A stretch of DNA of 64,000 bases from Haliotis rubra (GCF_003918875.1 NW_025767173.1:62001-126000); one strand, 5' to 3'. Positions 19,910 to 54,444 are shown, numbered from the stretch's first letter. A program made the numbers and translations. Notes: generated by a model not told the origin, from the sequence alone.

Positions 19910-20343
19910 TATATCTGAGTGGAGTATTCACGTTAAACTGCGACCTGGTATCTGGCTGGGCTGTTATCATCAAACCGACGTTAGTAAGGGGGAGGGCAAG
20001 CACAATACAAAAACAAACAATCAATTCCGAGTGTCATGTTAGTGTGCGGCCACCAGACGTATCTTAATAAATACGGATCCCACAGCCTGAGACGTAAAAT
20101 CAGTTCGACAATGACATGAAACAGCAATGTCCATAACGTTTGATACTGTTCACCCAGGAAACACTCTAATCATTACTCTTCCTGAAGATCTAACCATCAT
20201 TACTTGTACAAACCCTCTGGGTGACTTGCTTGTGGGAACTTCATATCAAGGATGAGTAACAAGACTAAGTCCCAAAACACAAACGTTAAAGAGCCTTTGT
20301 AAATAATTTATTTAAACGTAATAGGGAAATAATGCTGGTTCAG

Positions 20344-23300: not shown

Positions 23301-25846
23301 GTTGACGTTATTCTGCTGTATTCAATGTTTCTCACTGACCCTTCTTATAGAAAACTTCAAACCAAAATCCTTTGGATAACTATAATACTCACAGATTGCC
23401 TGCCACATATCTATCGTCTATACCAGGAGTGCCGCCCCCATAGCCAGAAGAAGTCTCCCCTAGCCACGCCACCAGACCATGATAGCTTCGGACTGTATTC
23501 ATCACTGACTGTAGTTCAGGTATAATACGGTCCATTATTGTATAGTCAGAAAAATCTTGGAGTTTGGCGGTGTGTCCATCAAAGTAGTAACTGAAACAGG
23601 AATTTTTAACTGTGTTACTGTATACACAACAATCACTTAAACAAATGGAGAACCGGGTTCAAGTCACCACACGGATACGATGTTTAAAACCTATTTCTGG
23701 TGTTCCCCTCCGTGATATTACTGGAGTATTGCTACTGACATACTCATTGTAGGCCCTGATACTTCCCCACCCTGAAGGAAGGTACTCACTGATGGATGGT
23801 CAAGACGTCTATGACACTGGCTCCACCCAAGGACAGGAAGCTGGAAGGAACGGTCACTTTTCACAGGTAGTAGGGACGAAACGTTTGTGGAAATGGATTC
23901 TCTTGTGTATGAAACTTTTACGCTTTTAAGTGGTTTTAATATGATTTTGTACTTTTCACACTTTTGATGTGAATTGATGCAATTTCTATTTTGTACATAC
24001 TTTTTAATGAACTTGTCTTTATAACCGGCTATGTCAGGTCCAAGGATGAGACTAGACTTATAGGCCGTTCTTTGGAGGACTTGTTTTAGGTCCTTGAAGT
24101 CACTTGCCACCTGAGCATCACTGATTGTAATGTTCCGATGTCGGAAATACAAGTTTGGTTCTTCATGAAAAATAGGTACAATTAAAATAAATTCAGCAAG
24201 CACGATATAAATATCTGGTAACGGTATCAATTTATCATGGAATAAATAACAATGCGAAGTTCAAAATGTAATATTAGTGATGAAAATCTGCTCTCGTTCT
24301 TCACGATAATGTGAAAAGATCACCCTGTGTGCATGCGGGATGAAAGTATTCACAATCTCCAGGCGGTTGGATTCCAGTGGTCCTTTAAAAACGGAAAATT
24401 AACCAACCTGACTACCGATCCATTCAGTCACCTCATACAAGTTAAGGTTGTTCGGGACCTCCTCCTCAGGACATCCCCAGCAAGAATAACTTTTTATGTG
24501 TTGTAAATGCCCCTGAAACCTACCATTTCCCAGTTCAATCCCTGCAAAAGGATATCCTTTGTCAGAGGAATATTTGAGCAGCAGCTTTGCATTTGATGGA
24601 TTCCACCTCGTTACGTTGCGGAGTACCAGGTTGAGACCAATCACCAGTTTGAAGCCAATCTTGTGAACAAACATGTTAAGATCATCCCAGGTGTTTGCTG
24701 AAAATAAGTGTTTCTAGATCAGGCATCAGATAATACATTCTTTCAGTTGTATATCTTGAATGTAGAGACAAATCACACTTGGATTTCGTGAACTCAGAAA
24801 TATGGAAATTCATCATTCAAAACGTACATGTAGATTCAAGGTCTTTCTGGGGAAGGTTTGTTCTAGAAAGATGCAACAATGTTATTTTGCTGTCACGATC
24901 TGACATCAAATAATACATTCTTACAGTTGTATATCTTGAATATAAAACACTTTAAACAAGATTATGTGAACACAGAAACATGAAATCTGTCTTTCAAAAG
25001 GGGACTCATTGGTGAAGGTGTTTGCTAGAAGGATGGAACAATGTTTTATAGCTTTCACCTGGGAGCTGGAACTGGTCTCCAGTAGCAATGTTGTGGGTCG
25101 GGTCAAACACCATGTAGTCCAGTGACGAGCCACCGATTCTCAGATGCCCTGGAGCTACAGCTTTTCCCAGAGTCAGCAGTTTGGGAGAACTGTTAAAACA
25201 AACACGTTTTGTGTGCTTCTTGAACCATGGTAATAATCAAGCTATATTCCCTGGATGAATGTAGTCCCTACAGGCTATTCTTACCAAGATTACAAAGAAC
25301 GTCACAAGACGTTTTATTCACAATGTGTTTTGTCCAGGTTAAAAGGCCCCGGTAAAGCTGTCTAAACGTCTTATGGTATTCCCTATTTATACTTGCACCA
25401 TATGTTCACAGACGAATAACTGACTTTACTTCGCACCGTTTTTTGACAAGTGCCGCTGATGGACCAGAATGCACCCGACCTGGTATCATCTCTATTTCAT
25501 AATGTTCATGATACAATCCAGACTTCTACTGTGGAAAGTGTTCATGGCATTTATTTGTGGATATAAATGTATATTTTCATCCGGAACCTCGATTTGCAAA
25601 CAAATCCGTCAACCAAGTAACAAACCAATCAGACATATTTGCCCCGATGTTTTATTACCTGACATTGTGATACTTCAGATTAGACCTCAGTTGACTGCCG
25701 GCGATGGTGACGCCAACAAACATGTCATCTATCACCTGCAACACGTGGTTAGTTTTCACCCTGATATGTTCGGTGTGTAGGGACACAGTAAACGGCTGTA
25801 TCAAAGCCAGTCCAAATAAACACAAGATCATGATATCCGCGAACAT
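20344..25846 (-). CDS. HPSE: Heparanase-like glycoside hydrolase family 79, copy A (10 exons, 482 aa)
   Basis: GT-AG exons 25846-25659, 25189-25059, 24697-24524, 24160-24001, 23840-23790, 23590-23393, 23051-22940, 22685-22576, 21006-20863, 20524-20344 total 1449 nt in frame. Motifs: [26 protein letters not shown] (acid/base), [19 protein letters not shown] (nucleophile), WLDKLG, RQ, PDYW, RLYAHC, VQLNG. Confidence 0.93.
20656..20827 (+). mobile_element. tRNA-derived SINE family A in the last intron of heparanase copy A
   Basis: A box tagcctagtgg, B box ggttcgaatccc, (actc)n tail, 10-bp TSD aagagttgac. Absent at the homologous site in copy B. Confidence 0.9.
24724..25053 (+). repeat. Diverged tandem duplication (about 180 bp) inside intron 2 of heparanase copy A
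   Basis: catca.ataatacattctt.cagttgtatatcttgaat...gaaggt.t..tctagaa.gatg.aacaatgtt occurs twice. Confidence 0.7.
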
Positions 25847-26775
25847 TTTCACCGTTACTTCATTTTGAGATATATACCTCCTATGTTCACTTCGGTTTGG
25901 GCAAACAGCAGGTGCCACCAAGACCTGACAATTGATAAGAAGATGGAGCCACATGTATGATTGAGATGATTAAGATTATGCCTAGACTTTTGGTCAAGAA
26001 CTGGGCTTGTGTGTATCTGTTTTGGTATCTTATCTTAGTTTTATTACGTAAATGTGAAACTGAGAAAAATCAAGTCCCGATAACATTTGGAAATATGTAG
26101 ACACACGACCTATCCTTAATATGACAAAGATACACTTTACATTTATGTTGTAGGTGAGTTTAAACACTTTGAAAAGTGATGACGCTGAGTCTAACAGTGC
26201 AAAATCTGCAAATAAAACTTTCCTGGACGATCGAAAATATTCTCCCATGCAAGCTTGTGTCGAGTCGACAAAGCCCATTGTCGAATATACAGAACACATG
26301 AACTCAGCTTGCACTGGGTCACAATCGACCACTAGTGGATTCTCCTTTAGCACTATTTAAACGCCTACCAAATATTTCGTCACAGCTTTTAACCAGTTAG
26401 TTTGCACATTCCTTTTGCGTGTTTGTGTTCTGTTGTCTCACTTAATTTTGTAAAAGTAACATTAATAAGCTTGTGTGTTCTAGATGCAAGTCCTTGCTAC
26501 AACAGTAGACTGTAAATGCTGTAAGAACCATATTGCTCCCTCTTCCATAGCTACATGCTGTTTGCAGGCTAGTTTGTAATTAATTTGACTACATACTGAC
26601 GACACATGCAAACGCCAGACAAGTATTATTCGTAAATCGTTATGCAGTAAATCGTACTTCTACTTTTAGTCAAAGTAACCCTACATGACACCAAAGGGGA
26701 TGTATCGGATGTATGGGATGTATCGTCAATATTGTACACACTGTAGTACCAAATTCTCATTCTGCGAGTGCAGTA

Positions 26776-27951
26776 AGCATGCAACTTATCCAAGCATTTC
26801 AAACTGATTTGTTATTGTGTGTGCTGTTTCTCAGGACGGGATTGATGTATTAAGATTTGTTCATTGTACATCAATAAATAACACACATTTCCAAAGATGT
26901 TTGGAGAAGCGGCAATTCACTAATGATATGTATAACCGTCTCCTGTCTTCATGTCAGTCTAGCTGGCCTAAATTGATGATTACAACATGCAAAGTCTCGA
27001 TTATTCTCCGAAACAAGTATGCCTATAATGCAAAATCAAGGTGAACATATAGGAACGGATCACTGAAAATCCGTAATGACACCAGGTGTTCGCCCCAAAA
27101 AGGAAGCATGTAGTTTCTGTCCCTCACTCAGACCATCTGCGTCGAATGAAAGTCTTTCTTGCCTGACCCATCCCAGCAGTACCGTCATGAGATGGCAGTC
27201 TGTAACAAATCTGGAGATCTAAATATGTTCGTGTTGCAACGCTGTCCATCAGTCAGGGTTCTTTTTGTGTTTTTTATTGTTGTTGTTTTTTTGTCCAACT
27301 GAATGATCTACAAATGTTACCTGAAGATCACTTAATCACCACACTTTAGCCATGTATTCAATGAGCATGCAACTTATCCAAGCATTTCAAACTGATTTGT
27401 TATTGTGTGTGCTGTTTCTCAGGACGGGATTGATGTATTAAGATTTGTTCATTGTACATCAATAAATAACACACATTTCCAAAGATGTTTGGAGAAGCGG
27501 CAATTCACTAATGATATGTATAACCGTCTCCTGTCTTCATGTCAGTCTAGCTGGCCTAAATTGATGATTACAACATGCAAAGTCTCGATTATTCTCCGAA
27601 ACAAGTATGCCTATAATGCAAAATCAAGGTGAACATATAGGAACGGATCACTGAAAATCCGTAATGACACCAGGTGTTCGCCCCAAAAAGGAAGCATGTA
27701 GTTTCTGTCCCTCACTCAGACCATCTGCGTCGAATGAAAGTCTTTCTTGCCTGACCCATCCCAGCAGTACCGTCATGAGATGGCAGTCTGTAACAAATCT
27801 GGAGATCTAAATATGTTCGTGTTGCAACGCTGTCCATCAGTCAGGGTTCTTTTTGTGTTTTTTATTGTTGTTGTTTTTTTGTCCAACTGAATGATCTACA
27901 AATGTTACCTGAAGATCACTTAATCACCACACTTTAGCCATGTATTCAATG
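26776..27951 (+). repeat. 588-bp tandem duplication, apparently identical units
   Basis: 26776..27363 equals 27364..27951 by eye; identical ORF translations 588 bp apart; AGCA microhomology at the junctions. Confidence 0.95.
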
Positions 27952-28628
27952 AGCACCGAACACACGGTAGCGAAGTAAAAGTACGTGGTAATATACTTTC
28001 AAACGTCAGCCCTTGCCTTCGTTGGGAGTGAATTCGAACAAGGCGTTCAATGTATAAACAAATGTTAAATATGTGTTGACGATGTGGAGCTTTACTGGTG
28101 ATAAGACGCGTTGGTGCAGGGGGTTGAGTTGAAGAATCATTTAGGCAACAGCTTAACTGTCGCATAGCCATGATCTTCCTGGTCTAAGGATGCAAAAGTA
28201 ACTCTATTCCACATATCTTGTAAAGAGGTGATTTTAAACTTAAAACGTGTAACCCTAAGATCGGTTCGTACCATGCTACAGTGTGAGAGCATAAGAAAGC
28301 CTCCTTTTGGAGCAGTTTATTCCATATTATATGAACTTAAGAACCTTCTAAACCTTCCAACCATTTATTCAAACACATACTGTTGTATTTGCACAGTGTG
28401 AAGTCGTTTCAGGGATGAATATAACTGTATAATTAAATAACCCTGTGTTGTGTTTCCTGTCTAATTCCACTCGGGGAAACATGTAGATTAACTGAAACTT
28501 GTAAATAGAAGTTAGTAATAGAGGATGTTATCAAAATTAAGATATTTCAAAGGCCACCTAACGCGTCTACATTCCAAAAGACAACCATCATGGCAGTTTG
28601 TAAACATTTTATTACAATTTTCAGATGG

Positions 28629-31600
28629 CTATCCGACAATGGTACCGTGGCCTTGTGATTGACATGCCGCGATGTTGGCGTCAGGGATGACGATGAAGCC
28701 GAATGAGTTTCCGGGTACTTTCATTGTCCCACTTCCAACAGATCTTGGCATCATGTGTGGTATTTGGTTATTGACAAGTTCCAGAGTGTTGCCATTGAGT
28801 TGGACTTTTCTGGAAAGAATATAAAACCTGGTTGGTCTGCTTATTCTTCTTGATCATCTGTGGATCCAACAGATGTCCTGCAACTATAGCATGTGTGAAC
28901 AAGTTTGTCGTAGAATGATGACAATTGTTATGGATATACAACTTCTTTTATTCTGTGAAAGGCGTTGTCGTTGTCATCACTTGCTTGACAACGGCATCTA
29001 TGTCGAAACTTCACCCTTCACAGAATAAAAAAGTTGTATATCTATAACAATTGTCATCATTCTTTATCAACTCAACTTCTAAAATGTCCATCAAAGAAGA
29101 AAGTTTGTCGTAGGTCATTTTACAGATTCTTGCGTCAAGAGTTGCTTTTGAGGCAAATGCCTCTCAACTTTATCCTCATTATTTAAACCGGTTGTTGATG
29201 GCTTTGCAACACGGACACAGTCCATAAGCTCTAGAGTTGAAAGAAAACATATGATATACAAACGTTGACGTAAGGTTTCCTCCCTCCGGAGTCAGCCAGA
29301 ATCTGTCCATGCTATTGATGTTCAGATCCGATATAGTCAGGAGTACGGGGTCTTTATTCAAGTTGAGGGCATACACTGTGATGCTTCCAGGCTTGTAGTT
29401 ATATACGCTGAAACATGAAAAGTGATGTCAATATGTAGGATTATTAGTATTACTTTCCTTGAAACCTAGTCAATTCATTCATTTTTGAAAATATCATATG
29501 AATGACTTGTAAGGGCATGATGTCATAATGATTTAAGTGACGTCATTTGTTTTGATGACGTCACATAGTTGCTAGCTATGCAAAGATCCAGATGCCACCC
29601 ACGGGAATCTCACATATAGGCATTACATCTCTGTAACGTCTTAAGTCGAATTCGATATTTATGATACGTACCAATCAGACCAAAACATTCCTTCCTGAAA
29701 ATCACGGACACTCAGCTGTTGTTCTGCCAGTACCTGGCATAGCTCTAAAATGATTCAAATTGCAATGACTGTGTGTATATTTGGACTTTGATAAAATGCT
29801 TTCTCAAGGTGATTAATGGTAATCTATGACCAAACTGTTGTGCAGTGTGCATTGTTGGGAAATGTTGACCAGGTTGTGAATACAGTTTATATTGTGAACT
29901 CACTTGTTAAGCTTCGTACAATGGGCATATAGTCGGATGTTGTCCGATGAGGATGGAACATCAAATACTTTGTTGCCAACAAGTCTCTTGTAAAGAAGCG
30001 TCAACCAATAGTCCTGGTAAATGAAATCATGGTGTCATTACACGATATTGTTTAGTGCAACCCATGCTTGTCGTAAGAGGCAAATCATTAGATCGGGTGG
30101 TCAGCCTCGCTGACATGGCTGACACATGTTATCGTAGTCCAATAGTGCTGATCGATGTTCATCATGTCAGTCACTGGATAGTCTGGTCCAGATTCGGTAA
30201 TTTACTACATTTCATACAGCTGGTATATCGCTGGGTGTAGCAACAACATACAGCACAAACAAACAAAACGAATGTAGTTGATGTCGCGATGGTCGAAACA
30301 GGATGATCCATGAGAGACTACCTCGAAGGCCTTGGTCACTACATACGGCCTATAAGCACAAGGTACTGTTCACCTATCATGATATGGAATTCCGTCATAA
30401 TGAGTAAGTGAGTGAGTGAATATGGTTTTACGCCGCTTTTAGCAATATTCCAGCAATATCACGGTGGGGAAGACCAGAAATGGGATTCACACATTGTATG
30501 TATGTGGGGAATCGAACCCGAGTCTTCGGCGTGACGAGCGAACGCTTTAACCACTAGGCTACCTAAACGCCCCTCCGACATAATGACATTTTGTAGCTGT
30601 TAATATGACATGATAATATATTAACGTAACATGCGTTCACGCACGGGAGTAGGGTCGCTGTTGTCATCAAGAAGTGAGTGATGCCCTCCGAAGAATGACT
30701 GACGCATGACCCTTTTTATACCATATTTTGCTGACACTCCCAGTTTATCAAGCCACCTAAGAATTTGAACAAATTCACAGTATTAGATTAATAATCCTTT
30801 CTTAACAAACCATGTATAGAAAAGAAGAAAACAGTTGGACGATAATTGTGGCACAGACACCGAAGACGTCATCATCAATGGTATATCCTACCCGCGTAAA
30901 CTTTTACAGAACAATGTCTTAAAGTTGAATCCCAATATTTTCAAAATAGTCCTGGTGTTTCTGCAGAACTGAACGCATCAGTAATCACCATCTAAGAAAT
31001 ATTTATTAGCAATCGAATTCTAAATCAACATATGCTGGCCCTTCATTCAAGGCGTTCTACTTGACGTTCCCACGTTGCTTTCTACTTCTGATTACAGGCT
31101 CTTCTTATAAACAAATCTACTCTGAGCATGAAACTGTTTGAAAAGAAAACGTTAAACAAACACCCTTTGAATAGCTAAAATACTCACAGATTGCCTGCCA
31201 CATATCTATTGCCAATGCCAGGAGTGCCGCCTCCATAGCCAGAAGAAGTTTCCCCTAGCCACGCCACCAGGCCATGATAGCTTCGCACCATACCCACCAC
31301 TGTTTGAACTTCGGATATAAGACGGTCCATTATAGAGTGGTCAGAAAAGTCTTCGAGTTTCGCTGTGTTTCCATTAAAGTAGTAACTGAAAAGAATAAAA
31401 TCTAACACAAAACGTCCTAACCGTATTAAGGTACACGCAACAACCAGCCAAACAATCGTTCCTTTCTATTTTTGTTCCTCTTATTATTTTGTATATATTC
31501 CTGTTATTGAAGTGTGTTACACAAAGTGATTGGTGATCTACTCATTTCTGTTCGGCGTCCACTATAAGCATCAGTTACCATCCCGCTGCTACTATATATC

Positions 31601-34600
31601 CATTATTCGGCAAATATGTCTTCGCTGTAATCCACGGTTGCTGCTGGAGTGAGTATGGTTTTGCGCCGCTTTTAGCAATATTCCAGCAATATCGCAGAGA
31701 GGGACACTAGAAATGGGCTTCACACATTATACCAAGTAGGGAATCAAACCCGGGTCTTCAGCGGGACGAACGGATGCTTTAATTTGGCTACCCCAAGACC
31801 CGATGCTACTGGATCATCCATAATGACATGAATGATTCATTGACGTCCACGTCCCTGATACCCTGCCACCCAAGGACGATACTCACTGATGGACGGTCAG
31901 GACGTCTACGGCACTGGCTCCGCCATCGGTCAGGAAGCTGGAATTGCATGATCACATTTGACAAGAGGGTATCGAGGAAGGTATCACTTGCATTTACCAC
32001 ATTCGTGTTTGTGGAAACCGTTTATCTGATGTGTGAAAAGATAAAAGCTACCGAATGGTTTAACGCCGCTTGGAATAATGAGGAACGACAGATGGGACAC
32101 AGGTTTCAGGCGTTTAAGCTGGGGCAAGGTAAATCCAAACCTCAAGGATGCAACTCAAGGGATTGACACACTCGTGCTCCCATGTCAGTTATTGAATGAA
32201 TGCTTTAGATTTGACACAAAGGGTGAGACTAACATACCATAGTAAGCACAGAGGTGGTTCAGTTTGTAAAACAACATTCTAGCACTGGGGCTATCAGCAC
32301 CATACTCCCAAGTGTAGCGTATGAAATGTGTATTTAATGCATACTTGTTTAAAAACTTGTCTTCATAACTGGCCACGTCAGGTCCGAGGATTAGACTAGA
32401 CTTATAGGCCGTTCCTTGGAGGACTTGTTTTAACTCTTTGAAGTCACTGGCCAGTTGCGCTTCACTGACAGTTGTATTCCATTGTCGGTAATAAAAGTTT
32501 GGTGCTTCATGGACAAAACATACGACGGTAATTATGCATTACGAATAACAAGGGATCCTGTCTACACACAGAGTATGGTACATCAAGGAGAAGGGAACTA
32601 ATATACAAATTATATTCATATCATTCTTAATGTTTTAAGGGTGTTGCATTCAATGTTAGTGTGAAAAGACGCAGATAATTCAGTAATAATACGATGTGAC
32701 CGTCTATTGTTTAACGCCCAAATAGGATACGTGGCACGTATGAACGAAATTATCCAGCCTGATTACGTATCTTTTTCTTGTTGTGGACCTGTTCTGTGCG
32801 GATTCCAAACAACTATATTTCAATTTTTTTAAATTATCTGTGATAGATGTGACATATATATGGCTTCAAACCTACCATTTCCCAGTTCAATCCCGGCAAA
32901 AGGATACCCTTTGTCAGAGGAATATTTGAGCAACAGCTTAGCATTTGATGGGTTCCACTTTGTTCCGTCACGGAGCATTAGGTTAAGACCAATCACCAGT
33001 TTGAGTCCAATCTTTTGAACAAACATGTTGAGATCATCCCAGGTCGTTGCTGAAAATATATGTTTCGGATTTGCATCTGTCTAAAACTATATGGTTTCAT
33101 ATATGTTAAAACAATGAGGCCAACCAAACAATGCATTTTGAAGCGTGGCGGATTTGAATCAAGAAATCCGTCGACAAATGTCAGGATTGTTGAATTTTGG
33201 GAACGTAGTCATGTTCCTATCTAGACATATGACAGTCCTCACTAGTAATGGTCGGAAGACGGGGTTTCCAGACGTTGGCCCAGTTTTATGGAATGATGCT
33301 ACATGTATTCCAAACTATTGTCCGATCTGGACTTGTTTGTATCAGCACAGTAGTCGGTAGTGGATTGAATTAAAGTTGTATATATTTGTTTATTGTTGTT
33401 CATTTTGGAAGATATAACTATCCTATCCAGCTATCACCTCGGAGCTGGAACTGCTGTCCAGTAGCAATGTCGTGAGTCGGGTCGAACACCATGTAGTCCC
33501 CTGATGTGCCCCCGACTCTCAGATACCCGGGTGCTAAAGCTTTTCCAAGGGCCAGCAGTTTGGGAGAGCTGTTGATAAAAACATATTTTTAGGCTCAACA
33601 AAATGCACTGGTAGTCAAATTACTGTCCTCAAGTGATTTGGAGTTTACACCCACATAGCAATTACTTGCAGCGTTTTGGAGCAACGAGGGGGTGAAACTT
33701 GCTATTTGATCATTGAGCGGTCAATGATAAAGCTGGACAGAAAGGCAATCAATGAGAAAAAGCATGACTTCACTTAAATATTGTGTACATTTCATTTGTT
33801 TTAGCTATTCAGGAAACCTAGACCCAAAAATGAAAGCAAACGTCATGAATTAAAACCCAATATTTGAAATGACTGGTTCCCTTGTTCATAATATCTATAT
33901 TGAATTTGGAAGTGGAATTCGTTAGTAAGCAGTGTACTTAGTGTTTTTCCCTTGTGGCTGATCTGTTTCATTATACACATGAATCGAAATTCTCCTCGTA
34001 ATTTACCACGTAATTTACCACGTAAATCAACCGCCTAACCCGCTCAGCTAACGCGACTTCCACAAAAATGGAAGTTGGACAACTGGTAGTCTAGGCTGCG
34101 GCCTTTGTGTACCCCTCTGATAAGTGTTAATTGGCACGGCTCCCACGGATTTACCACTGATTTACCAAAGTGAACTAGAAATCGAGGAGACCAGTTGGAC
34201 ATCCTCATCTCTATCACTTTTAGATCTTTGCATAAGATTCATTGTGACAAAACACTCTAAAGAAAACTCAAGCTATGTAAAGAAAGTGATTCTTGTGTAT
34301 TTGTGTTGTTGTGGATATGTAACCGATCTATTTGGATCTATAACCTAATTATCTGGATCTATAACCTATCTATGTGATTCATAACCTATCTATTTGGACC
34401 TATAAGCTATTTATCTGGATCCATAACCTATCTATGTGGATTCATAACCTAGCTATGTGGATCCATAACGTATCTATATGGATCCATAACCTATCTATGT
34501 GGATCCATAACCTAATCCATAACCTATCTATGTGATCCATAACCTATCTATGTGGATCCATAACCTATCTATGTTGATCTATAACCTATCTATGTGGATA

Positions 34601-37433
34601 AATAAACTATCTATATGGATCTATAACCTATCTATATGGATCCATAACCTATCTATGTAGATCCATAACCTATTTATGTGGATCCATAACCTATCTATGT
34701 GGATCCATAACCTATCTATGTGATCCATAACCTATCTATGTGGATCCATAACCTATCTATGTTGATCTATAACCTATCTATGTGGATCAATAACTTATCT
34801 ATATGGATCTATAACGTATGTATGTGGATCCATAATCTATCTATGTGATCCATAATCTATCTATGTGGATCTATAACCTATCTATGTGGATCCATAACCT
34901 ATTTATATGGATCCATAACCTATCTATGTGGACCATAACCTATCTATGTGGATCCATAACCTATCTATATGGATCCATAACCTTATGTGATCCATAACGT
35001 ATCTCTATGGATCCATAGCCTATCAATATAGATCTGTAACCTATCTATGTGGATCTATAACCTATGTATGTAGATCCATAAACTATCTATATGGATCCAT
35101 AACTTATCCATGTGGATCCATAACCTATCGATGTAGATCCATAATCTATCTATTTGGACCTATAAGCTATTTATCTGGATCCATAACCTATCTATGTGGA
35201 TCCATAACCTAGCTATGTGGATCCATAACCTATCTATGTGGATCCATAACCTATCTATGTGGATCCATAACCTATCTATGTGGATCCATAACCTGTCTAT
35301 GTGATCCATAACCTATCTATGTGGATCCATAACCTATCTATGTTGATCTATAACCTATCTGTATGGATAAATAACTTATCTATATGGATCTATAACCTAT
35401 GTATGTGGATCCATAATCTATCTATGTGATCCATAACCTATCTATATGGATCTATAACCTATCTATATGGATCCATAACCTATCTATGTGGATCCATAAC
35501 CTATCTATGTGGATCCATAACCTATCTATGTAATCCATAACCTATCTATGTGGATCCATAACCTATCTATGTTGATCTATAACCTATCTATATGGATCAA
35601 TAACTTATCTATATGGATCTATAACCTATGTATGTGGATCCATAATCTATCTGTGTGATCCATAATCTATGTGGATCCATAACCTATCTATGTGGATCCA
35701 TAACCTATCTATATGGATCCATAACTTATCTATGTGGACCCATAACCTATCTATATGGATCCATAACCTTATGCGATCCATAACGTATCTCTATGGATCC
35801 ATAGCCTATCAATATAGATCTATAACCTATCTATGTGGATCTATAACCTATGTGTGTGGGTCCATAACCTATCTATATGGATCCATAACCTATCCATTTG
35901 GATCCATAACCTATCTATGTAGATCCATAACCTATCTATGTGGATCTATAACCTATCTATGTGGATCCATAATCTATCTATGTGGATCTATAACCTATGT
36001 ATGTGGGTCCATAACCTATCTATATGGATCCATAACCTATCCATGTGGATCCATAACCTATCGATGTAGATCCATAACCTATCTATGAGGATCTATAACC
36101 TATCTATGTGGATCTATAACCTATGTATGTGGGTCCATAACCTATCTATATGGATCCATAACCTATCCATGTGGATCCATAACCTATCTATGTAGATCCA
36201 TAACCTATCTATGTGGATCTATAACCTATCTATGTGGATCCATAATCTATCTATGTGGATCTATAACCTATGTATGTGGGTCCATAACCTATCTATATGG
36301 ATCCATAACCTATCCATGTGGATCCATAACCTATCGATGTAGATCCATAACCTATCTATGTGGATCCATAACCTATCTATGTGGATCCATAACCTATCTA
36401 TGTGGATCCATAACCTATCTATGTGGATCCATAACCTATCAATGTGGATCCATAACCTATCGATGTGGATCCATAACCTATCTATGTTGATCTATAACCT
36501 ATCTATGTGGATAAATAAACTATCTATATGGATCTATAACCTATCTATATGGATCCATAACCTATCTATGTAGATCCATAACCTATTTATGTGGATCCAT
36601 AACCTATCTATGTAGATCCATAACCTATCTATGTGGATCTATAACCTATCTATGTGGATCCATAATCTATCTATGTGGATCTATAACCTATGTATGTGGG
36701 TCCATAACCTATCTATATGGATCCATAACCTATCCATGTGGATCCATAACCTATCGATGTAGATCCATAACCTATCTATGTGGATCTATAACCTATCTAT
36801 ATGGATCCATAACCTATCTATGTGGATCCATAACCTATCAATGTGGATCCATAACCTATCGATGTGGATCCATAACCTATTGATGTGGATCTATAACCAG
36901 AATGATGACTTCGGTTTTTCGCTTTTTGTCTAGCAACATTTTATCAGTTCTAACCTTTGGTGTCTAAATTTCACAACTTTAGTGTTCAGTAGAGCAGTCT
37001 CTTTCAAAGACCGCCAAAAGTTTTAGGGTAGGCGTGTAGAGAAGGTCACTAAAGTTCACATATAACTGACAAAAATTATGTTAGTCATCGCATTTTGTCG
37101 CATTTTGTTAATATGGATTCTATTGACCCTAAAATATATGTTCAATCATTTCCACCCATCAACAGGACCTGCCCACAACCCCATCTATCAAGTAACGTAA
37201 TCTATGTAACAGAATGAACAGACATGTTTGCACAGATGTTATGCCTACCTTACATTGTGAAACTTCAGATTGTACCTCAGCCGTCCGCTGTCAATGTTAA
37301 CCCCGACAAACATGTCATCTATCACATGCAACACGTGGTTAGTTTTTACTCTGATATGTTCGGTGTGCAGGGACACAGTAAACGGCTGTATCCAAGCCAG
37401 TCCAAATAAACACAAGAACATATCCATGGTCAT
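28629..37433 (-). CDS. HPSE: Heparanase-like GH79, copy B (10 exons, 481 aa), acid/base Glu replaced by Ala
   Basis: Exons 37433-37249, 33568-33438, 33049-32876, 32504-32345, 31937-31887, 31385-31188, 30756-30645, 30013-29904, 29407-29264, 28809-28629. Exons 2-10 have the same sizes and phases as copy A; no stops seen. The junction reads ELGN-A-PN. Confidence 0.92.
28914..29100. mobile_element. Short foldback insertion, possibly a Penelope-like element end with an inverted 5' fragment
   Basis: About 50-bp inverted arms (28912-28962 / 29014-29063), flanked by a 13-bp direct repeat aagtttgtcgtag. Related sequence at 47515..47650. Confidence 0.6.
30058..30250 (+). mobile_element. SINE family B (diverged)
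   Basis: cccatgcttgtcgtaagaggc...gatcgggtggtcag...cactggatagtctggtccaga. Confidence 0.75.
30408..30573 (-). mobile_element. SINE family A
   Basis: Reverse complement match to 20656..20827. Confidence 0.85.
31648..31795 (-). mobile_element. SINE family A
   Basis: Reverse complement match to 20656..20827. Confidence 0.8.
34155..34235 (+). mobile_element. Penelope-like reverse transcriptase fragment
   Basis: [25 protein letters not shown] resembles the IYPxELEIKxTT..SASYLDL motif of Penelope-type RTs. Confidence 0.45.
34310..36898. repeat. 21-bp minisatellite (gtggatccataacctatctat)n, about 120 units, in intron 1 of heparanase copy B
   Basis: Directly visible tandem array with recurring variant units. 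Confidence 0.97.
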
Positions 37434-39741
37434 GTTAACTGTTTCCCTGTTGTAGGAGGGTAAAGTGCCCTTCTTCTGTGGTGCCGAAAGATAGCAGGTG
37501 CTACCAAGCCTTGGCAATAGATAAGGCAGTCCAGATGCGTGTGTTTCACAACTTCCATGAATTCTAATGCATATATGTATTTCAATGCCTTCTAGTGTTT
37601 TATTTGCTATCTAACTACCACCTAGATATCATGTTTCTTAGTTTCAAGGATCGGCTTTATTAATGCTAAGTTTGACTTCCTGCTTGTATTACCATGTCAT
37701 CTTTAAAATGGAAACCTATTTTCTAAACACATGCCATGCACCTTTGGATTTTATTTCAAAATACAGCCTGATAGCATGTTGTATATTGGAATAAACAAGC
37801 ACTTTAAACAGATAACATCAAGACAAATTTGTGAATAATAGAAATGAAAGCTACAAGACCCTTTCAATTCCTATACAGGTAATAAGTTGGGAGGTAATAC
37901 AATGGTCGGTTAGTGAAAATGGCACTTGCAAAAATAACTGTCCTGGACATGGTCAGATCTGTCTTAAGGGTTGGCCATAAAGACACATGGAAAGATGGTA
38001 TGTTTCAAAAAGAGACAGTGTTCACGTAGATATGTTTCCTGTCCATGTCCCTGAAGTGACTGTTTTCCTCTGTGTAACATGACAAACTATTACACATGGA
38101 TCTGCAGAATAATATCATATGTGTTCCGCACCTTGACGATATATGGGATATGACAGTCTATTAGAAATGTACCTATCCAGACACTTTTGAGGTATCTGTG
38201 AATGAGTGCATGGTGTAATTTATTATGAGACCCTGTCCAGCTGTACATATTGTAACTATGTGTGAGATATCAATGTATATGTGTCTATAAAATAAAGGAC
38301 CATTAACCTACATGTGTGCAGACCATAAAGCGTACTCCACTATCCGTAGATGGTGGATTTAAAACCCAGTGCAAAAGCCAGTGACTGATGTAATGAAGAC
38401 TGATCCACGCCGTCCGATGACAATGCCATTGTTTGCATTTCATGCAATTTCAACAACATGTAATGTTCTTTAAGTTTCAGAGCAACTGAGAAATATGGAC
38501 GGCGTGTTGTTCGATATGAGGGGAACGCCATGATTGGAATAACTATGTCTATGCATAAATTAAATGAGGATTTGACACTTGATATGTTTTTCTTGTTGTT
38601 TCTCAGATGTCCAACCTGACGGATTAATCGAAGGGTTTTCTTAATATTGACATTGTTTATCAAAATAAATGAGGTCATATGGACATCTCAGTTTTTAACC
38701 TTTTGGCAACGTGTCTTTTCTTTGATTAACAAAACGGAGTAAACAATTTAATCATATTCATATGCGAAACAGGACACAAATAGTACCCATGGGGATACTG
38801 CCTACTTGTCTAGGTATTCTACTCCCAGCTTTGAACAAGACATCCAGCAATTACCCATGAAGGTATCGGAATATTGAGATATTAATGTTATCAACACACC
38901 CATTACATAACATGGTAAAATAAAACAAAGGTCCCACAGATTAGAGATTTACTTTCTGCTTTAACTTTTGCCTGGACATTGCTTTACTGTCATTTACATC
39001 CATGGAATTTGTCAATATCAGCATGTGTAATTCGAACTTGTGTTTTATGTTCCCCAAAAACTGATTAGACCTAGTATTTGTTTAAAGGTTTTGTTAGTAC
39101 ATTGCTGGAAACTGCAATGTAGGCGTATGTAAGTCCATGCTCATGAGCTGAGAAATCCATCATGCTAGTTCATGTGTAAATGAAATGTGTGATTTATTAT
39201 GCCAGAAAAATGTTCTTTTGCTGAAAGCTGTCTGTATTCCAAACTGCTCAATGAACGTCAACCTATTCTTAAAGGGCCTGTACTGTATGTAATGTTACAC
39301 ACAAGTTCAGCCCAGAATATACGCCCGAAGATTACTGTGACAGTATTAAGGTATCCTATCGTTCACTCACACATACAAACTCAGATGTCCCATAATCTCT
39401 ATTCAGATTGGTCAATGCATTACCCGGCGTTGTCGAACTTCCTGGTTTAATACTGACGCATATATCACAATGGCGTTATAAATAACATTCATAGAGATGA
39501 ATAGCAACCTTCCTGCCACTTAGCTATGTTGACGTAAAGATCCATGCAAACAGTTATGTATGCGTTCCGAACGAAGGAGTTATAATCACACGCCTTTTCG
39601 TCCTATATATGCTGTCAAGGCGACACATACACAGATGCATGTGTATACAAGTACTTTTGACATACGCAGATGTATGAAACTGGCACACGTTGACGTGTAG
39701 ACCCCGACACATATGGACACAACTGACTTTAACATATACAG

Positions 39742-40760
39742 ATTCAGACTCAGACTCGTTTATTCAATACTACAGGCCCTATGACCTAAGGTGCAATTAC
39801 ACCAGAACATATTATTTTGTCACGTGGATGTGATATATTAAACAAAACTTATAATTAAGAACGGCGTGCATTAAATAGATGCTTCAAATATAATGATAGT
39901 AATTTGATGTTGGAGATTTTGTGAAGAAATAAGTTTGATGAAGTTACAATTGTTTGGCACAACAGAAGTTAACCAAGGTAAATATTTCATTCGGAGTGCA
40001 GAATATTTTGGACAGGAAAATAATATGTGAACTTCATCTTCGATGTCGGGATCCATGCAATGTTCACAGCAGATGTTATAGTCGTACTGTTGTTTCTCCT
40101 TCCTGTATGCATTTACCTTCAGATTGTTCAATGCTATTCTGAATTCACAGAATGCACGTACCAAAGACTTGTCTTCGAGACAGGTAATATATGTTTCTGT
40201 GTTAAAATCAGTTTTAAATCCAGAGTATAATGACAGATAACTTGAGGTAGAAACAGACAAATGCAAATCCTGGATAATGATATCCTGTAACCTTTGTTTG
40301 AAAGTGCTGAGAAATAGCTTCTCGTCACCAACCTGTTGTGATAACCAAGTCCATGCGAAACCTGTTGAAAAGAGCAGAGATCTAACCTCCGACACCCAGT
40401 TATGTCTTCCATTATCGTCTAAAGATTTAAGAAGAAGATAGCTCTGCCTTGGTTATCTAAAGGAGTCCAGTCGTAGTAGTTTCAACCAGTATTTGACTAC
40501 TCTCATGCTGGTATACACAAACACACTGCAGCGACCTGTTTCACCCAATATTGCTTTGTTTGATGCAAATTTCCCAACAGATATGAATCGTTTAAGGAAT
40601 GCGGTATGGACCTTTTCAATTGCTTCATTGTATAGTCTTCCCCATATCTCGGAGCCATAAAGAAGGATTGGTAAAATTTTGCAGTGGAAGATAGGCATTG
40701 CTGTAGAGAACATCCTTGCTTGGTTACGTTTAAATAGCTGGTATAGTTAATGCTTAACAT
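39742..40760 (-). mobile_element. 5'-truncated LINE (RTE-X-like) 3' end
   Basis: KILPILLYGSEIWG, LGETGR, KYWLKLL, CEHC..EDEVHILFSC, then AATAAA and a (tctgag)n tail. Confidence 0.85.
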
Positions 40761-40774
40761 ATACAGTTGTAGAG

Positions 40775-40970
40775 TAAGGGGCGACTAACGGGATCGGGTG
40801 GTCAGACTCGCTGGCTTGGTTGACACATGTCATCGTATCCCAATTGCGTCGATCGATGCTCATGCTGTTGATCACTGGATTGTCTGGTCCAGACTCAATT
40901 ATTAACAGGCCGCCATCATATAGCTGGAATATTGCCTTGTGGCATAAAAGTAATTAACTCACTCACTCAC
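40775..40970 (+). mobile_element. SINE family B
   Basis: ggcgactaacgggatcgggtggtcaga...tagctggaatattgc...actcactcactcac. Confidence 0.85.
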
Positions 40971-42335
40971 TACAGATGTATAACGGTGGTACATGTGTAC
41001 ACACGTACAAATGTATACACAGCTACCTCGAACATACTTATCCGTATCGCATAGATATGCTGTAAACGTTTCCGGTTTGGAACAATATAGACTTGGTGTA
41101 TGATTCCTATAGATACGGCTTTACGCTCAGACACATATGAACACAACTACCTCTGACACACAGTTTATCTCTATGACGTGGAGGTGCATGGTATCCCCAG
41201 TGTGAGAGAAAGCGTGATATCAAAATAACCTGAGAGCCGGTTCATAAAAAAAGAGCTGAAGGAACATTTTACAAAATCAGTCTCTAGTCGTTAAAGACAT
41301 GAACAGTCTCGTTATATGAACGAACCAGCTTCGTTCCCTTTCTACTTCTACGTATGTCAAAACGCCCGTATTACTCACGGTCGAACAGCCGAATAATCCA
41401 CACCCAGTGGGGGACAAATTCAATATATTCAAAATTCATTGAGCACTGACAATACCCAGGTGTCTCTCGCCATCCGGCTTTTTGTGTAGCTGTATAGATT
41501 AAAACTCTCTGCTTTGGAAACTCTCAATGTATATTTACACATGTTTGCATGTCTGGTAATAAAAGTAGTACCCGACGTCGCTGAGGGCAGACTGATCGAA
41601 AACTTACCTTCAGTATGAATCCTGTCAACTGTGTGGTGATTCTGTGTTGCATTGCAGTGATCACATGTGTGGAGATTCCGTCACGTGCCAGGGGACGGCG
41701 TGCATTATATACAGCAGTAAAAGAAGTAAAAGGTAAGCGAAATTAATAACTACTTTCATTCATCTGTTCTAATAATTATGGTTAATCTTATAGACATTTA
41801 AAATATTTGGGATAAGCCTTATTGCAATATTTTATATACAGATCATAATATGTTTTGCTCAAGAATGATGTAGTTGTATATGCACGTACCTTGTGGGCTA
41901 TTACTACTAAGCACGGCATATAGCCGAAGAAACTGGCATAGGATGCAAGTGCTCATTGGTTTAATGAAACTTTAGAGCTCGTTTATTGCCACACCACCAA
42001 ATACAACAAGTATGGTGATTCGTAATTCTAATCCCTGATAAGCAAGTACACGCCTTCAAATGACACGATATTGGTTCTAGACCTACTGGCGACACATTAA
42101 CATTTAAGTCATTTCAGTCGAGTATCAGAACAGAAAATAGTCTCATCTAATGGATGTGTAAGTCGATCGATATCCTGGTAAAACGACAATGAATAAATCA
42201 CAACCAACTGTCCATTCCTTACATAATCATAGCACGTTTAAACAAAGACGTCACATATGCTTATTACTGTTACAATGTTCGGATGTGCCACATACAACAA
42301 CTAAGAAGGTTTACAACACGGTTGAAGCACTTCGG

Positions 42336-42498
42336 GAGGCCGTGGGGTAGCCTACCGGTTAAAGCGTTCGCTCGACACGCCGAAGGTCCTGGTTCCATTC
42401 CCCGCATGGGTACAATGTGTGAAGCCCATTACTGGTGTCCCCCTCGTGATATTGCTGAAACATTGCTAAAAGAGGTGTAAAACTAAACTCACTCACTC
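42336..42498 (+). mobile_element. SINE family A
   Basis: Matches 20656..20827. Confidence 0.85.
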
Positions 42499-42741
42499 AA
42501 GACCATCGAAAACCATCTTGTCATTTGCAACTTCAGCATATTTTTACTTAGCACGTGCATTCCTTTGTAATATTCTTTAGCATGTTATAATTAAGTTTAA
42601 CTACGCTTCGCTTGCTTGCAAATTATCAAGGCTGTACCTAAACCATTTTAAACAATTTTGAAACATTTCTTGTAAGGCAAGTTCTTTGCCATTCTTGGAA
42701 TTTTCCGCAATATATATATGTATACAGACACACGCATATGC

Positions 42742-42781
<40 letters not shown>

Positions 42782-42784
<3 letters not shown>

Positions 42785-44058
42785 CACAACCAGAAATTAT
42801 TGAGAATTTAAAGATTGTATTTTTTATCACTCATTACTCTCGTATTAAATGTGAATATTAGCAGAACATAACTCCAGATTCAAAGACAGGTGAACAGTTA
42901 GTATTTTGTCAAGTCACCATGGGCAGCAATGCAGGCTCAATGCGGCGGGGCATACTACTGATCAAAGAAGTTAGAAAGTCGTGGTCCTTGCTGTCCCAAT
43001 ATCGGACCACCTCTTCTTTCATTTCAGCAATATTTGTCAGATTTTTCTTATTGACATTTTCCTTCATAAGTCCCCAAACATTTTCTATTGGATTTAGGTC
43101 AGGGCTATAGCTTGTCCAATCTAATAATGTCATATTTTGGGTCCGAAACCAGGCCTGTGAATGCTTTGAACGATGGTTTGGATCGTTGTTCTGCTGGAAA
43201 ATCCAAAACTTTCCATAGAACACATGAGCAGATGGAAGTAAATTTTCCGCTCACTGTTCATATTCCCTTCAAATACACAGAGGGGCGTTGCCCCTAACAC
43301 AGATATGCCACCCCACACTTCAAATTTAGGACTGTACTTTGGGCGCTGACACAAAGGTTTCTCAGTTTGTTTGGTCCAGAATTTCAAGTGTATTAGGAAA
43401 CAGCCACACAGAACTTTCATCTGAGAAAATCACATTGTCCCAGTTAAAATTTCTATGCTGTAAGCACCAGTTCAACCTTCGCTCCTTTTGTTCAGGTTTC
43501 ATGATAGGTGATGGAATACCTCGACTTTTCGGCCAACCCATTACATGCAGCTCAGTTCTAATTGTCTCCTTACAGACAGCCACGGTTCCTCAATCAATCA
43601 TATCCAGCCTTAAGTTTTCTAAACTCCTTCGTTTGTTTTTAGAAACAAGAATACCAAGCCGCCTCCTGTCACCGACAGTCAATTTTCCCGGCCTACCTGC
43701 GCCTCCCTTGTGCCATATCCAATGCCATATCCATTTGCAATAGTTTTCAAAACACAATAAACAGTGGACACACGGATGCCTGTTCTACTTGAAATCACTT
43801 TAGCTGATCTGATGTCCTTGTTATAATACTCTAAAATCAACTTCCTCTTCTCTAAATCATCCATACTGAGGATCACTGAAAATGTCGTCTGCTAGCAAGT
43901 AAACAAAGGGGGAAAACGCTTCACAAACTAATGAAAAAGGATTAACGTAGTTGTCTCTCTTGAATGAAACCAAGCACTTGATAGCTGGTCAAGGTTGTTT
44001 ATACTAGAAATCCAATTAAACATATTCCTAAAATTCTCAATAATTTCTGGTCATACTA
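42782..44058 (-). mobile_element. Degenerate Tc1-like transposon, about 1.28 kb
   Basis: TIR core accagaaattattgagaattt at both ends, inserted in a TA run. Fragmented transposase: VIFSDESS, VWGGIS, FQQNNDPNH (second D changed to N), SPDLNPIENVW. Confidence 0.88.
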
Positions 44059-44109
44059 TATACACAAGTATGTATATATATATACACACAGAGAGAGAGA
44101 GAGAGAGAG

Positions 44110-48433: not shown

Positions 48434-48668
48434 GTGAGTGAGTGAGTTTAGCTTTACGCTGCACTTAGCACTATTCCAGCGATATGGGGGTGGTCTGTAA
48501 ATAATCGAGTCTGGACGAGACAATCCGGTGATCAACAGCATGAGCACCGATCTGCGCAATTGGGAACCGATGACATGTGTTAACCAAGCCAGCGAGTCTG
48601 ACCACCCGATCCCGTTAGTCGCCTCTTACGACCAGCTGAAGGTTCATTCTAACCCGGACCTTCACGGG
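48434..48668 (-). mobile_element. SINE family B nested antisense inside an older family-B copy (48300..48700)
   Basis: 14-bp TSD tgtcgatcactgga at 48420 and 48669. Confidence 0.88.
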
Positions 48669-48889
48669 TGTCGATCACTGGAATGCCTGTTTACAGACTA
48701 GAGCCACATAGTTTGAATACCAAACATCATACATACAAACCTAAGGGCAACAACTCTGTACAGGAACTTGTAGTTCCTGAGAAACTACACTGTTGTGGCA
48801 ATTACAATTCACTAAATTTTCTGATAAATGAAGCATTCTATGTAGTATGTATTTCACTTCCTCGGTGCATCCTCGGTACACTGACGGTA

Positions 48890-54266: not shown

Positions 54267-54444
54267 CTGAAACACAAATGCGAACATTTATTTCAGTGAG
54301 TAGTCATCAGCGAGCTGCATTTTGTCTTTGAAGAAGGCAACATGCAATTGATCATATTTTAGCTATAAACTCACAACACTGAAATGAAAAAGGCATAAGC
54401 CGATAATTTACAATACGCGTTATGACATAATCAGTGATACTAAC

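What the first reader, a model, noticed from the sequence alone, without database searches (positions are those of the whole stretch)
32345..32880. Heparanase paralog B carries a natural acid/base Glu-to-Ala substitution hidden across a splice junction
Seen: exon 3 ends GGA AAT G in both genes. Exon 4 starts AA CCA in copy A (N-E-P) but CA CCA in copy B (N-A-P; base 32504), with no alternative AG nearby. The nucleophile motif WLGETSS and the whole 10-exon frame are intact. Established: NEP carries the acid/base (human HPSE Glu225) of clan GH-A enzymes. E-to-A mutants lose hydrolysis but can act as thioglycoligases or be rescued by anions, and HPSE2 is a non-catalytic heparan-sulfate binder. 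Inference: an independently evolved pseudo-enzyme/lectin, or an enzyme with altered chemistry, next to a paralog that keeps both glutamates.
Basis: partly seen in the sequence, partly recalled or inferred. Interest (0 to 1): 0.75.

Follow-up and report, generated by a model that had tools for sequence, protein, structure and literature searches.

The report
Abalone heparanase-like gene lacking its catalytic acid
A blacklip abalone gene for a heparanase-like sugar-cutting enzyme has an alanine where the essential acid/base glutamate should be, yet selection keeps it intact in several copies, so it is probably a working non-enzyme or an unusual enzyme and not a dead gene.

Summary
The window is Haliotis rubra scaffold QXJH01000484.1. 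It holds two tandem 10-exon GH79 genes on the minus strand, all introns GT-AG.

- **The substitution.** Copy B reads G|CA = Ala164 across the exon 3/4 junction. Copy A reads G|AA = Glu. Ala164 aligns to human heparanase Glu225, the acid/base. My copy-B model is identical to RefSeq XP_046584052.1.
- Two further B-type copies in the same assembly have the same junction and the same codon: B2 in a ~41-kb tandem segmental duplicate, and B3 on another contig.
- **Selection.** B versus B2 differ by 20 synonymous and 6 non-synonymous changes (dN/dS 0.12, p = 9e-9). The B stem branch (about 0.30) is no faster than the A stem (about 0.42).
- **Rarity.** Among 194 GH79 proteins sampled, only B-type proteins have Ala in this column.
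The -1 subsite tyrosine (human Tyr391) is His in B-type.
- **Origin.** A-type and B-type form an H. rubra-specific clade. The loss is independent of HPSE2, which lost its nucleophile instead.

Not shown: no RNA evidence was found, the base could not be read in other individuals, and function is inferred. This scan noted heparanase arrays on other DNA of this genome.

The parts
28629..37433 (-). Copy B, a heparanase-like GH79 gene of 481 aa (= XP_046584052.1). Exons: 37433-37249, 33568-33438, 33049-32876, 32504-32345, 31937-31887, 31385-31188, 30756-30645, 30013-29904, 29407-29264, 28809-28629.
   Evidence: Searches give the model and GT-AG at all introns. One search shows 100% identity to P0151. 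One search shows the same exon lengths in other Haliotis paralogues.
32503..32876 (-). Split codon 164: G (32876) + CA (32504-32503) = GCA Ala, at the position of the acid/base Glu (human Glu225). Intron 3 lies between the two parts.
   Evidence: Alignment to human heparanase.
31250..31252 (-). Codon GAA = Glu279, the catalytic nucleophile in WLGETSS (human Glu343). It is retained.
30678..30680 (-). Codon CAC = His326, at the position of human Tyr391 (-1 subsite, binds the glucuronate carboxylate). It is derived in B-type.
   Evidence: Conservation statement from PMC9500389.
32362..32370 (-). Ser209, Tyr210 and Glu211 in the loop after strand 5. Ser209 aligns to human Gln270 and Glu211 to Arg272. 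Both are B-derived (G209S, K211E).
20344..25846 (-). Copy A, a neighbouring GH79 paralogue of 482 aa that keeps Glu165 (G|AA, 24524 + 24160-24159), Glu280 and Tyr327. Exons: 25846-25659, 25189-25059, 24697-24524, 24160-24001, 23840-23790, 23590-23393, 23051-22940, 22685-22576, 21006-20863, 20524-20344.
17224..58939 (.). One unit of a tandem segmental duplication of about 41 kb (GIMAP/Schlafen gene, repeats, B, A). The second unit, about 94% identical, starts near window 3966 and runs beyond the window start. It carries B2 and A2.

Best explanation
Copy B is a real, intact, selectively maintained GH79 (heparanase-like) paralogue of Haliotis rubra. One A-to-C change at the first base of exon 4 turned the clan GH-A acid/base glutamate into alanine. 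A second change turned the -1 subsite tyrosine (human Tyr391) into histidine. The fold, the apparent signal peptide, the nucleophile Glu279, Asn163, His233 and Tyr235, and the Gly-Gly backbone site are all kept. Without a general acid, a retaining beta-glycosidase cannot efficiently protonate the leaving group of an ordinary glycoside. The protein is therefore most likely unable to hydrolyse polysaccharide at a useful rate. I infer that it works as a secreted non-catalytic glycan-binding or regulatory protein, a pseudo-glycosidase. This is analogous to vertebrate HPSE2 or the GH18 chi-lectins, but it arose independently and by a different lesion. Shown here: the sequence, its presence in three copies, purifying selection, the predicted fold, and the rarity of the substitution. 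Inferred: loss of hydrolysis, ligand binding, secretion and expression.
For: The junction and codon are established, and the model is identical to XP_046584052.1. The same GCA codon and junction occur in B2 and B3. Purifying selection: B vs B2 has 20 synonymous and 6 non-synonymous differences, dN/dS 0.117, binomial p 9e-9; B3 vs B is 0.18 and B3 vs B2 is 0.26. On the stems, B has 22 non-synonymous and 22 synonymous changes (about 0.30) and A has 24 and 17 (about 0.42). Exons of B and B2 are about 98% identical, against 94.6% for the whole gene. Ala164 = Glu225 and His326 = Tyr391 by alignment to 5LA4. Column counts: acid/base is Glu in 179 and Ala only in B-type; Tyr391 is Tyr in 181 of 194. 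PMC9500389 states that Asn224, Glu225, Glu343, Gly350 and Tyr391 are absolutely conserved in the -1 subsite. The AF2 model has pLDDT 92.3, with Ala164 just after strand 158-161 and Glu279 in strand 274-284. Foldseek gives TM 0.88 to proheparanase and 0.92 (target-normalised) to mature heparanase. The human E225A/E343A double mutant is used as catalytically dead heparanase (PMC4387558).
Against: No RNA evidence was found. No run on record as RNA held the stretch, and no short transcript-derived protein fragment matched residues 90-250. The base at 32504 was not read in other individuals or species, because the table was truncated. B3 carries two homopolymer indels; if real, one B-type copy is broken. 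The retained nucleophile and most of the pocket would also fit residual or altered catalysis. Binding of any glycan is untested, and the basic heparan-sulfate-binding loop of human heparanase is not conserved here.
Confidence: 0.55

Rival explanations
1. Copy B is still an enzyme but with altered chemistry. With the nucleophile intact and the acid/base removed, it could act on substrates with good leaving groups. It could use an external anion or cofactor, or a substrate sulfate or carboxylate, as the base, as plant myrosinase uses ascorbate. Or it could favour transglycosylation or thioglycoside formation.
For: Nucleophile Glu279, Asn163, His233, Tyr235 and Gly285-Gly286 are all kept. Purifying selection is strong. 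B-derived substitutions lie in the loops after strands 4 and 5 and at the Tyr391 position, which looks like remodelling and not random decay. There is a precedent: myrosinase lacks the acid/base and ascorbate substitutes for the catalytic base (Burmeister et al. 2000, cited in PMC4690043). Azide rescue and thioglycoligase behaviour of acid/base mutants are established knowledge and were not checked here.
Against: No candidate substrate or cofactor is known. Tyr391, which holds the glucuronate carboxylate, is also lost, which points away from the ancestral substrate. There are no biochemical data.
Confidence: 0.2
2. Copy B is a recently disabled gene on its way to becoming a pseudogene. The frame is intact only because too little time has passed.
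For: Two conserved active-site residues are lost. No RNA evidence was found. B3 has two frameshifting indels in the assembly. The gene sits in a large birth-and-death GH79 expansion (and earlier scan notes).
Against: After the Glu-to-Ala change the B copies diverged by dS 0.058 with dN/dS 0.12, against a neutral expectation of 77% non-synonymous differences (p 9e-9). B and B2 both keep all 10 exons, their splice sites and the frame. The B stem rate is not higher than the A stem rate. The B3 indels are both in A-runs, as expected of nanopore consensus errors.
Confidence: 0.1
3. Artefact: a base-call or assembly error, a rare allele of the sequenced animal, or a different splice acceptor that restores Glu in the mRNA.
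For: The base was not seen in reads here, because the table was truncated. All three copies come from a single assembly of one animal. No cDNA was available.
Against: Three copies that differ by about 4-5% all carry the same C at the same junction. The NCBI gene model uses the same acceptor. The junction is conserved in H. rufescens and H. asinina paralogues. No alternative acceptor gives Glu without deleting 23 residues. A contig from a run under another organism label spans 32324-32744 with only 4 differences in 421 bases.
Confidence: 0.05

Closest known systems
Vertebrate heparanase-2 (HPSE2), the known GH79 pseudo-enzyme
   Same: It is a GH79 fold protein without hydrolytic activity that is retained by selection alongside a catalytic paralogue (PMC12406646).
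   Different: HPSE2 has Gly at the nucleophile position, keeps the acid/base Glu, and keeps a helical lid over the cleft. Copy B keeps the nucleophile, loses the acid/base and the Tyr391 equivalent, and has no linker or lid. It arose by a duplication specific to the H. rubra lineage, so it is not an HPSE2 orthologue.
Human heparanase HPSE (PDB 5E8M, 5LA4) and its E225A mutant
   Same: Sequence identity is 36-42%, TM-score 0.88-0.92, with the same two-domain fold. Ala164 reproduces in nature the E225A half of the laboratory E225A/E343A double mutant that is used as catalytically dead enzyme (PMC4387558).
   Different: Copy B has no 6-kDa linker. The basic heparan-sulfate-binding loop (human Gln270-Lys280) is replaced by an acidic or neutral one. 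The substrate of the abalone family is unknown.
Plant myrosinase (GH1), a natural retaining glycosidase without an acid/base residue
   Same: It belongs to clan GH-A, keeps the nucleophile, has the acid/base replaced by a non-acidic residue, and is under selection.
   Different: It is a different family, with Gln instead of Ala, a thioglucoside substrate with a good leaving group, and ascorbate as base (reference). None of these features is known for copy B.
GH18 chitinase-like lectins (chi-lectins)
   Same: They are lineage-specific duplicates of an active glycosidase that lost the catalytic acid and act as glycan-binding proteins. This is established knowledge and was not checked here.
   Different: They belong to a different family and use a different mechanism (substrate-assisted). 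Their binding function is shown experimentally, whereas here it is only inferred.

Membership tests
Glycoside hydrolase family 79 (homology) | Match to Pfam Glyco_hydro_79n (PF03662) and significant similarity to solved GH79 structures | tested here: met
   PF03662 is precomputed for P0151. phmmer gives E = 3e-95 to human proheparanase 5LA4.
Glycoside hydrolase family 79 (homology) | A (beta/alpha)8 barrel plus a beta-sandwich domain | tested here: met
   AF2 model with pLDDT 92.3 and pTM 0.91. Foldseek TM 0.88 to 5LA4 and 0.86 to leech hyaluronoglucuronidase 7EYO.
Catalytically competent retaining GH79 hydrolase | Nucleophile Glu at the end of strand 7 (human Glu343) | tested here: met
   Glu279 in WLGETSS lies within strand 274-284.
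Catalytically competent retaining GH79 hydrolase | Acid/base Glu in the N-E-P motif after strand 4 (human Glu225) | tested here: not met
   Ala164 (GCA) in B, B2 and B3.
Catalytically competent retaining GH79 hydrolase | The -1 subsite Tyr that binds the glucuronate carboxylate (human Tyr391) | tested here: not met
   His326 in B and B2. The column is Tyr in 181 of 194 proteins. Conservation is stated in PMC9500389.
Catalytically competent retaining GH79 hydrolase | Measured hydrolysis of a glucuronide substrate | not testable with these tools
   This needs recombinant protein.
Heparanase-2 (HPSE2) type pseudo-enzyme | Nucleophile replaced (Gly381), acid/base kept, lid helix kept, orthology to the HPSE2 clade | tested here: not met
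   The nucleophile is kept and the acid/base is lost. The segment between the 8-kDa and 50-kDa equivalents is short. The gene sits in an H. rubra-specific clade with copy A. HPSE2 features are from PMC12406646.
Heparan-sulfate-specific heparanase (HPSE sensu stricto) | Basic heparan-sulfate-binding loops lining the cleft (human Lys158-Asp171 and Gln270-Lys280) | tested here: inconclusive
   The second loop aligns to [11 protein letters not shown] in B, with no basic cluster and Glu at the Arg272 position. The first loop falls in a poorly aligned region. Substrate specificity cannot be read from sequence.
Unitary or duplicated pseudogene | Frame disruptions, lost splice sites, or dN/dS near 1 | tested here: not met
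   B and B2 are intact. dN/dS is 0.12-0.26 among B copies. Only B3 has two homopolymer indels of uncertain reality.
Expressed protein-coding gene | Spliced transcript joining exon 3 to exon 4 at 32876|32504 | tested here: inconclusive
   No run on record as RNA held the stretch. No transcript-derived fragments were found. The only support is the NCBI gene model, whose evidence is not visible here.

The most novel reading that the evidence does not exclude
B-type proteins are naturally evolved acid/base-less GH79 catalysts, or obligate partners of the adjacent A-type enzyme. One possibility is that they turn over special substrates using an external or substrate-borne base, or carry out transglycosylation, as a myrosinase-like solution in an animal GH79. 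The other is that the B-A gene pair, which was duplicated as a unit, works as a regulator-enzyme pair in the way HPSE2 counteracts HPSE1.
Probability: 0.2. Interest if true: 0.8.

Novelty: new variant of a known kind. Interest (0 to 1): 0.48.

Why it matters
Pseudo-glycosidases are known, and GH79 already has one, HPSE2. This would be a second, independent and very young GH79 example, made by a different lesion: acid/base plus carboxylate-binding Tyr lost, nucleophile kept. Its still-catalytic-looking sister gene lies 3 kb away. That gives a natural matched pair for asking how a glycosidase becomes a binder or changes chemistry. It also provides a ready-made natural acid/base mutant of the kind engineered for thioglycoligases. 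It adds to signs that the large abalone glycosidase expansions include non-catalytic members. The practical weight is limited until expression and binding or activity are shown.

Tried and rejected
- **Reading the base in other animals.** Read laying on four runs laid only DNA contigs, and its difference table was cut off at 31170, so position 32504 could not be read.
- **RNA evidence.** The look-up of sequencing runs found no holder on record as RNA. A fragment search with residues 90-250 of P0151 found no transcript-derived pieces.
- **Use of the spliced protein.** It could not be pasted into tools. I reached it through an exon-6 search of the representative library and then a word search, which returned the RefSeq protein.
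- **Alternative acceptor restoring Glu.** Rejected.
- **RNA editing.** Rejected on chemistry: GCA to GAA needs C-to-A, which no known editing type makes. This is my own knowledge.
- **A general trend in the abalone GH79 expansion.** Rejected. All other Haliotis paralogues sampled keep Glu. The apparent exceptions were motif variants, or mis-spliced or partial models such as P0267 and P0014.
- **Relaxed constraint on the B stem.** Not seen.
- **A relocated acid/base, for example the new Glu211.** This could not be tested because model coordinates are not exposed.
- **Literature.** Searches for these accessions and for abalone heparanase-like genes found nothing specific.

Full report
**What is in the window.**
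An earlier scan note called this genome an abalone. Protein look-ups place the window on Haliotis rubra scaffold QXJH01000484.1 of assembly GCA_003918875.1, with window position w equal to record position w + 62000. Comparing the window with itself shows two tandem heparanase-like genes on the minus strand. I built both models by hand from conserved blocks and splice signals.

- Copy B runs 37433-28629, with 10 exons and 481 aa.
- Copy A runs 25846-20344, with 10 exons and 482 aa.
- All nine introns of each gene are GT-AG and both frames are open.
- The exon lengths (131, 174, 160, 51, 198, 112, 110, 144, 181 for exons 2-10) are the same as in three H. rufescens and H. asinina paralogues. I threaded the RefSeq proteins of those paralogues exactly onto their genomic loci.
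- My copy-B protein is identical over all 481 residues to XP_046584052.1, "heparanase-like [Haliotis rubra]".

**The observation.**
Exon 3 of both genes ends GGA AAT G followed by gtaggt. In copy A, exon 4 starts after catgaag with AA CCA, giving G|AA = Glu. In copy B it starts with CA CCA, giving G|CA = Ala164, whose bases are 32876 + 32504-32503. The phase-1 intron that splits this codon is conserved in the H. rufescens and H. asinina paralogues, all of which read G|AA. One A-to-C change at the first exonic base therefore accounts for the difference.

I scanned every AG from 150 nt upstream to 120 nt downstream of the acceptor. None upstream gives an open in-frame product. The only in-frame AG that would give Glu is at 32435 and would delete 23 residues.

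In phmmer alignments, exon 3 ends on ELGN of human heparanase. In the full-length alignment to proheparanase 5LA4, Ala164 pairs with Glu225 of ELGNEP. The nucleophile Glu279 in WLGETSS pairs with Glu343.

**Is it an error or a singleton?**
The reads tool did not settle this. All four runs laid were DNA contigs, and the table of differences was cut off at position 31170, before 32504. It does show one useful piece. A contig from a run under a second organism label spans 32324-32744 with 4 differences in 421 bases. Contigs from a third label match B introns and exons at about 91-94% identity. A B-type gene therefore exists beyond the assembled animal, but its codon state there is unknown.

The assembly itself gives better evidence, because it contains two more B-type genes.

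- **B2** lies about 55 kb further along the same scaffold, at L002 52711-63029, next to an A-type gene A2.
- **B3** lies on contig QXJH01001979.1, at L001 6001-13058, next to A3.

All three B-type genes read ...GGAAATG|gtaggttt ... tgttttgtccatgaag|CACCAAAC. Both A-type genes whose junction is within a fetched locus read ...|AACCAAAC.

B, B2 and B3 differ from each other by about 4-5% over the gene including introns. The B-A unit and the B2-A2 unit belong to a collinear tandem duplication of about 41 kb at about 94% identity. Three versions in one diploid animal mean at least two loci. The Glu-to-Ala change is therefore older than this duplication and is not a base-calling slip.

**Is the gene decaying?**
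B and B2 both keep every exon, splice site and the frame. Their coding sequences differ by 20 synonymous and 6 non-synonymous changes, with dN 0.0068, dS 0.058 and dN/dS 0.117. The neutral expectation is that 77% of differences are non-synonymous, so the binomial p is 9e-9. A versus A2 gives 0.28. B3 against B and B2 gives 0.18 and 0.26.

I polarised the fixed A-type versus B-type differences with three outgroup coding sequences. The B stem has 22 non-synonymous and 22 synonymous changes (about 0.30). The A stem has 24 and 17 (about 0.42). The two do not differ (Fisher p = 0.5), and both lie in the family's usual range of 0.22-0.28. B-type genes have therefore been under purifying selection after losing the glutamate.

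The one blemish is B3. The assembly shows a 1-base deletion in an AAAA run of exon 3 and a 1-base insertion in an A run of exon 8. These may be nanopore consensus errors or real frameshifts. The RefSeq model there (XP_046566480.1, 206 aa) skips around them.

**How unusual is it?**
I aligned 194 GH79 proteins of 300 aa or more, gathered by two searches. They came from molluscs, cnidarians, vertebrates and insects.

- The acid/base column is Glu in 179 and gapped in 8.
- It is Ala only in the B-type H. rubra proteins.
- The remaining three are a mis-spliced A3 model, a partial hagfish model and a partial cockroach model with Gln.

The residue aligned to human Tyr391 is His326 in B and B2. That column is Tyr in 181 of 194 proteins. 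A review of heparanase structures lists Asn224, Glu225, Glu343, Gly350 and Tyr391 as absolutely conserved residues of the -1 subsite that holds glucuronic acid (PMC9500389). Copy B has lost two of those five.

Other B-derived changes lie in the loops after strands 4 and 5:
- L167F and H171Q after strand 4.
- G209S at the human Gln270 position.
- K211E at the Arg272 position.

**Fold.**
An AlphaFold2 model of XP_046584052.1, built with a 60-sequence alignment, has mean pLDDT 92.3 and pTM 0.91. Ala164 sits three residues after strand 158-161, and Glu279 lies inside strand 274-284. This is the clan GH-A layout, with the acid/base after strand 4 and the nucleophile on strand 7. Foldseek gives TM 0.88 to human proheparanase, and 0.92 (target-normalised) with rmsd 1.5 Å to mature heparanase. 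The segment between the 8-kDa and 50-kDa equivalents is short, as earlier scan notes reported for other abalone GH79 genes.

**Origin.**
In a maximum-likelihood tree of the closest Haliotis proteins, A-type and B-type genes of H. rubra form one clade (support 92/93). Each type is monophyletic (100/99 for A-type, 100/100 for B-type). The stems are similar in length, 0.072 for A and 0.085 for B, and the tips are shorter for B.

No protein from H. rufescens, H. asinina or H. cracherodii in the databases falls inside the B group, and all of them carry Glu. dS between A and B is 0.27 overall and 0.37 in exons 1-7. Exons 8-10 are 94-99% identical between the two types, which suggests gene conversion at the 3' end. 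The change is therefore young, arose in this lineage, and has nothing to do with HPSE2.

**What it most likely does.**
In a retaining beta-glycosidase the acid/base protonates the departing sugar in the first step and activates water in the second. Replacing it with Ala cripples cleavage of ordinary glycosides. For human heparanase, the E225A/E343A double mutant is used as the catalytically dead control (PMC4387558). With Tyr391 also changed, the ancestral glucuronide site is altered as well.

Because the gene is nevertheless conserved, I read B-type proteins as secreted non-catalytic GH79 proteins that bind a glycan or modulate the neighbouring enzyme. I give this a confidence of about 0.55.

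The main rival, at about 0.2, is altered chemistry. The nucleophile and most of the pocket are kept, and myrosinase shows that a clan GH-A enzyme can dispense with the acid/base when the leaving group is good and a cofactor supplies the base (reference in PMC4690043). A decaying gene (about 0.1) and an artefact (about 0.05) are poorly supported.

**What is not shown.**
- Expression. No holder on record as RNA was found and no transcript-derived fragments.
- Frequency of the allele in populations.
- The codon state in related species.
- Any biochemical property.

**Comparison with known systems.**
The closest known case is HPSE2, the GH79 pseudo-enzyme. According to PMC12406646 it has Gly at the nucleophile position, keeps the acid/base Glu, and keeps a lid helix. 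Copy B is the reverse on all three points and is not its orthologue. My literature searches for GH79 pseudo-enzymes, for abalone heparanase-like genes and for the accessions found nothing on this gene. I class it as a new variant of a known kind.

Noticed in passing
window 25846-25659, joined to L002 58071-63029: RefSeq model XP_046584064.1 (P0266, 482 aa) spans 53 kb. It joins exon 1 of the window's copy A to exons 2-10 of the distant B2 gene. The window's copy A, intact by my model, is left with only a 229-aa product, and B2's own exon 1 (L002 52711-52898) is unused. This is probably an annotation error.
   Followed up: partly
window 58939-17224 versus L002 31881-72742: A collinear tandem segmental duplication of about 41 kb at about 94% identity. 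It carries a GIMAP/Schlafen-type gene, repeats and the B-A heparanase pair. The second unit starts near window 3966.
   Followed up: partly
L001 8605-8777 and 11652-11762 (contig QXJH01001979.1): The third B-type copy (B3) has a 1-base deletion in an AAAA run of exon 3 and a 1-base insertion in an A run of exon 8. Together they restore the frame after 230 garbled codons. They are either real frameshifts or homopolymer errors in the assembly.
   Followed up: partly
window 25700-25702 (copy A codon 49) and the same position in A2: A-type proteins have Ala where human heparanase has Asp62, a -1 subsite residue, and Ser where it has Thr97. The Asp62 column is variable across GH79 (D 135; G, S, E or A in about 30), so the meaning is unclear. 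Copy A is therefore not a pristine reference enzyme.
   Followed up: partly
window 34310-36898 (intron 1 of copy B): A minisatellite of about 2.6 kb fills intron 1, with short units that translate as WIHNLSM in open frames. The equivalent intron of B2 holds the same array (L002 53261-57358).
   Followed up: no
window 30375-30563 and 31647-31795 (introns of B); 20663-20855 (intron of A): A short interspersed repeat of about 150-190 bases occurs in inverted copies. In all four DNA runs its summed contig depth was thousands of times higher than in the flanks, so it is a very abundant element in abalone genomes.
   Followed up: no
window 26776-27000 and 27364-27588 (between A and B): A 225-base stretch is repeated exactly, 588 bases apart. 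ORFs in the two copies, such as 26817-27044 and 27405-27632, are identical.
   Followed up: no
P0199 (H. asinina XP_067659153.1) and P0269 (H. rubra XP_046553587.1): Another Haliotis GH79 paralogue also has His at the Tyr391 position, with an altered Tyr348-Gly349-Gly350 site (F-D-H), while keeping both glutamates. The carboxylate-binding site seems to be evolving repeatedly in the abalone expansion.
   Followed up: no
P0057 (Periplaneta americana KAJ4427949.1, partial): A cockroach GH79-like protein aligns Gln at the acid/base position and Leu at the His296 position. It may be another natural acid/base variant, or a poor gene model.
   Followed up: no
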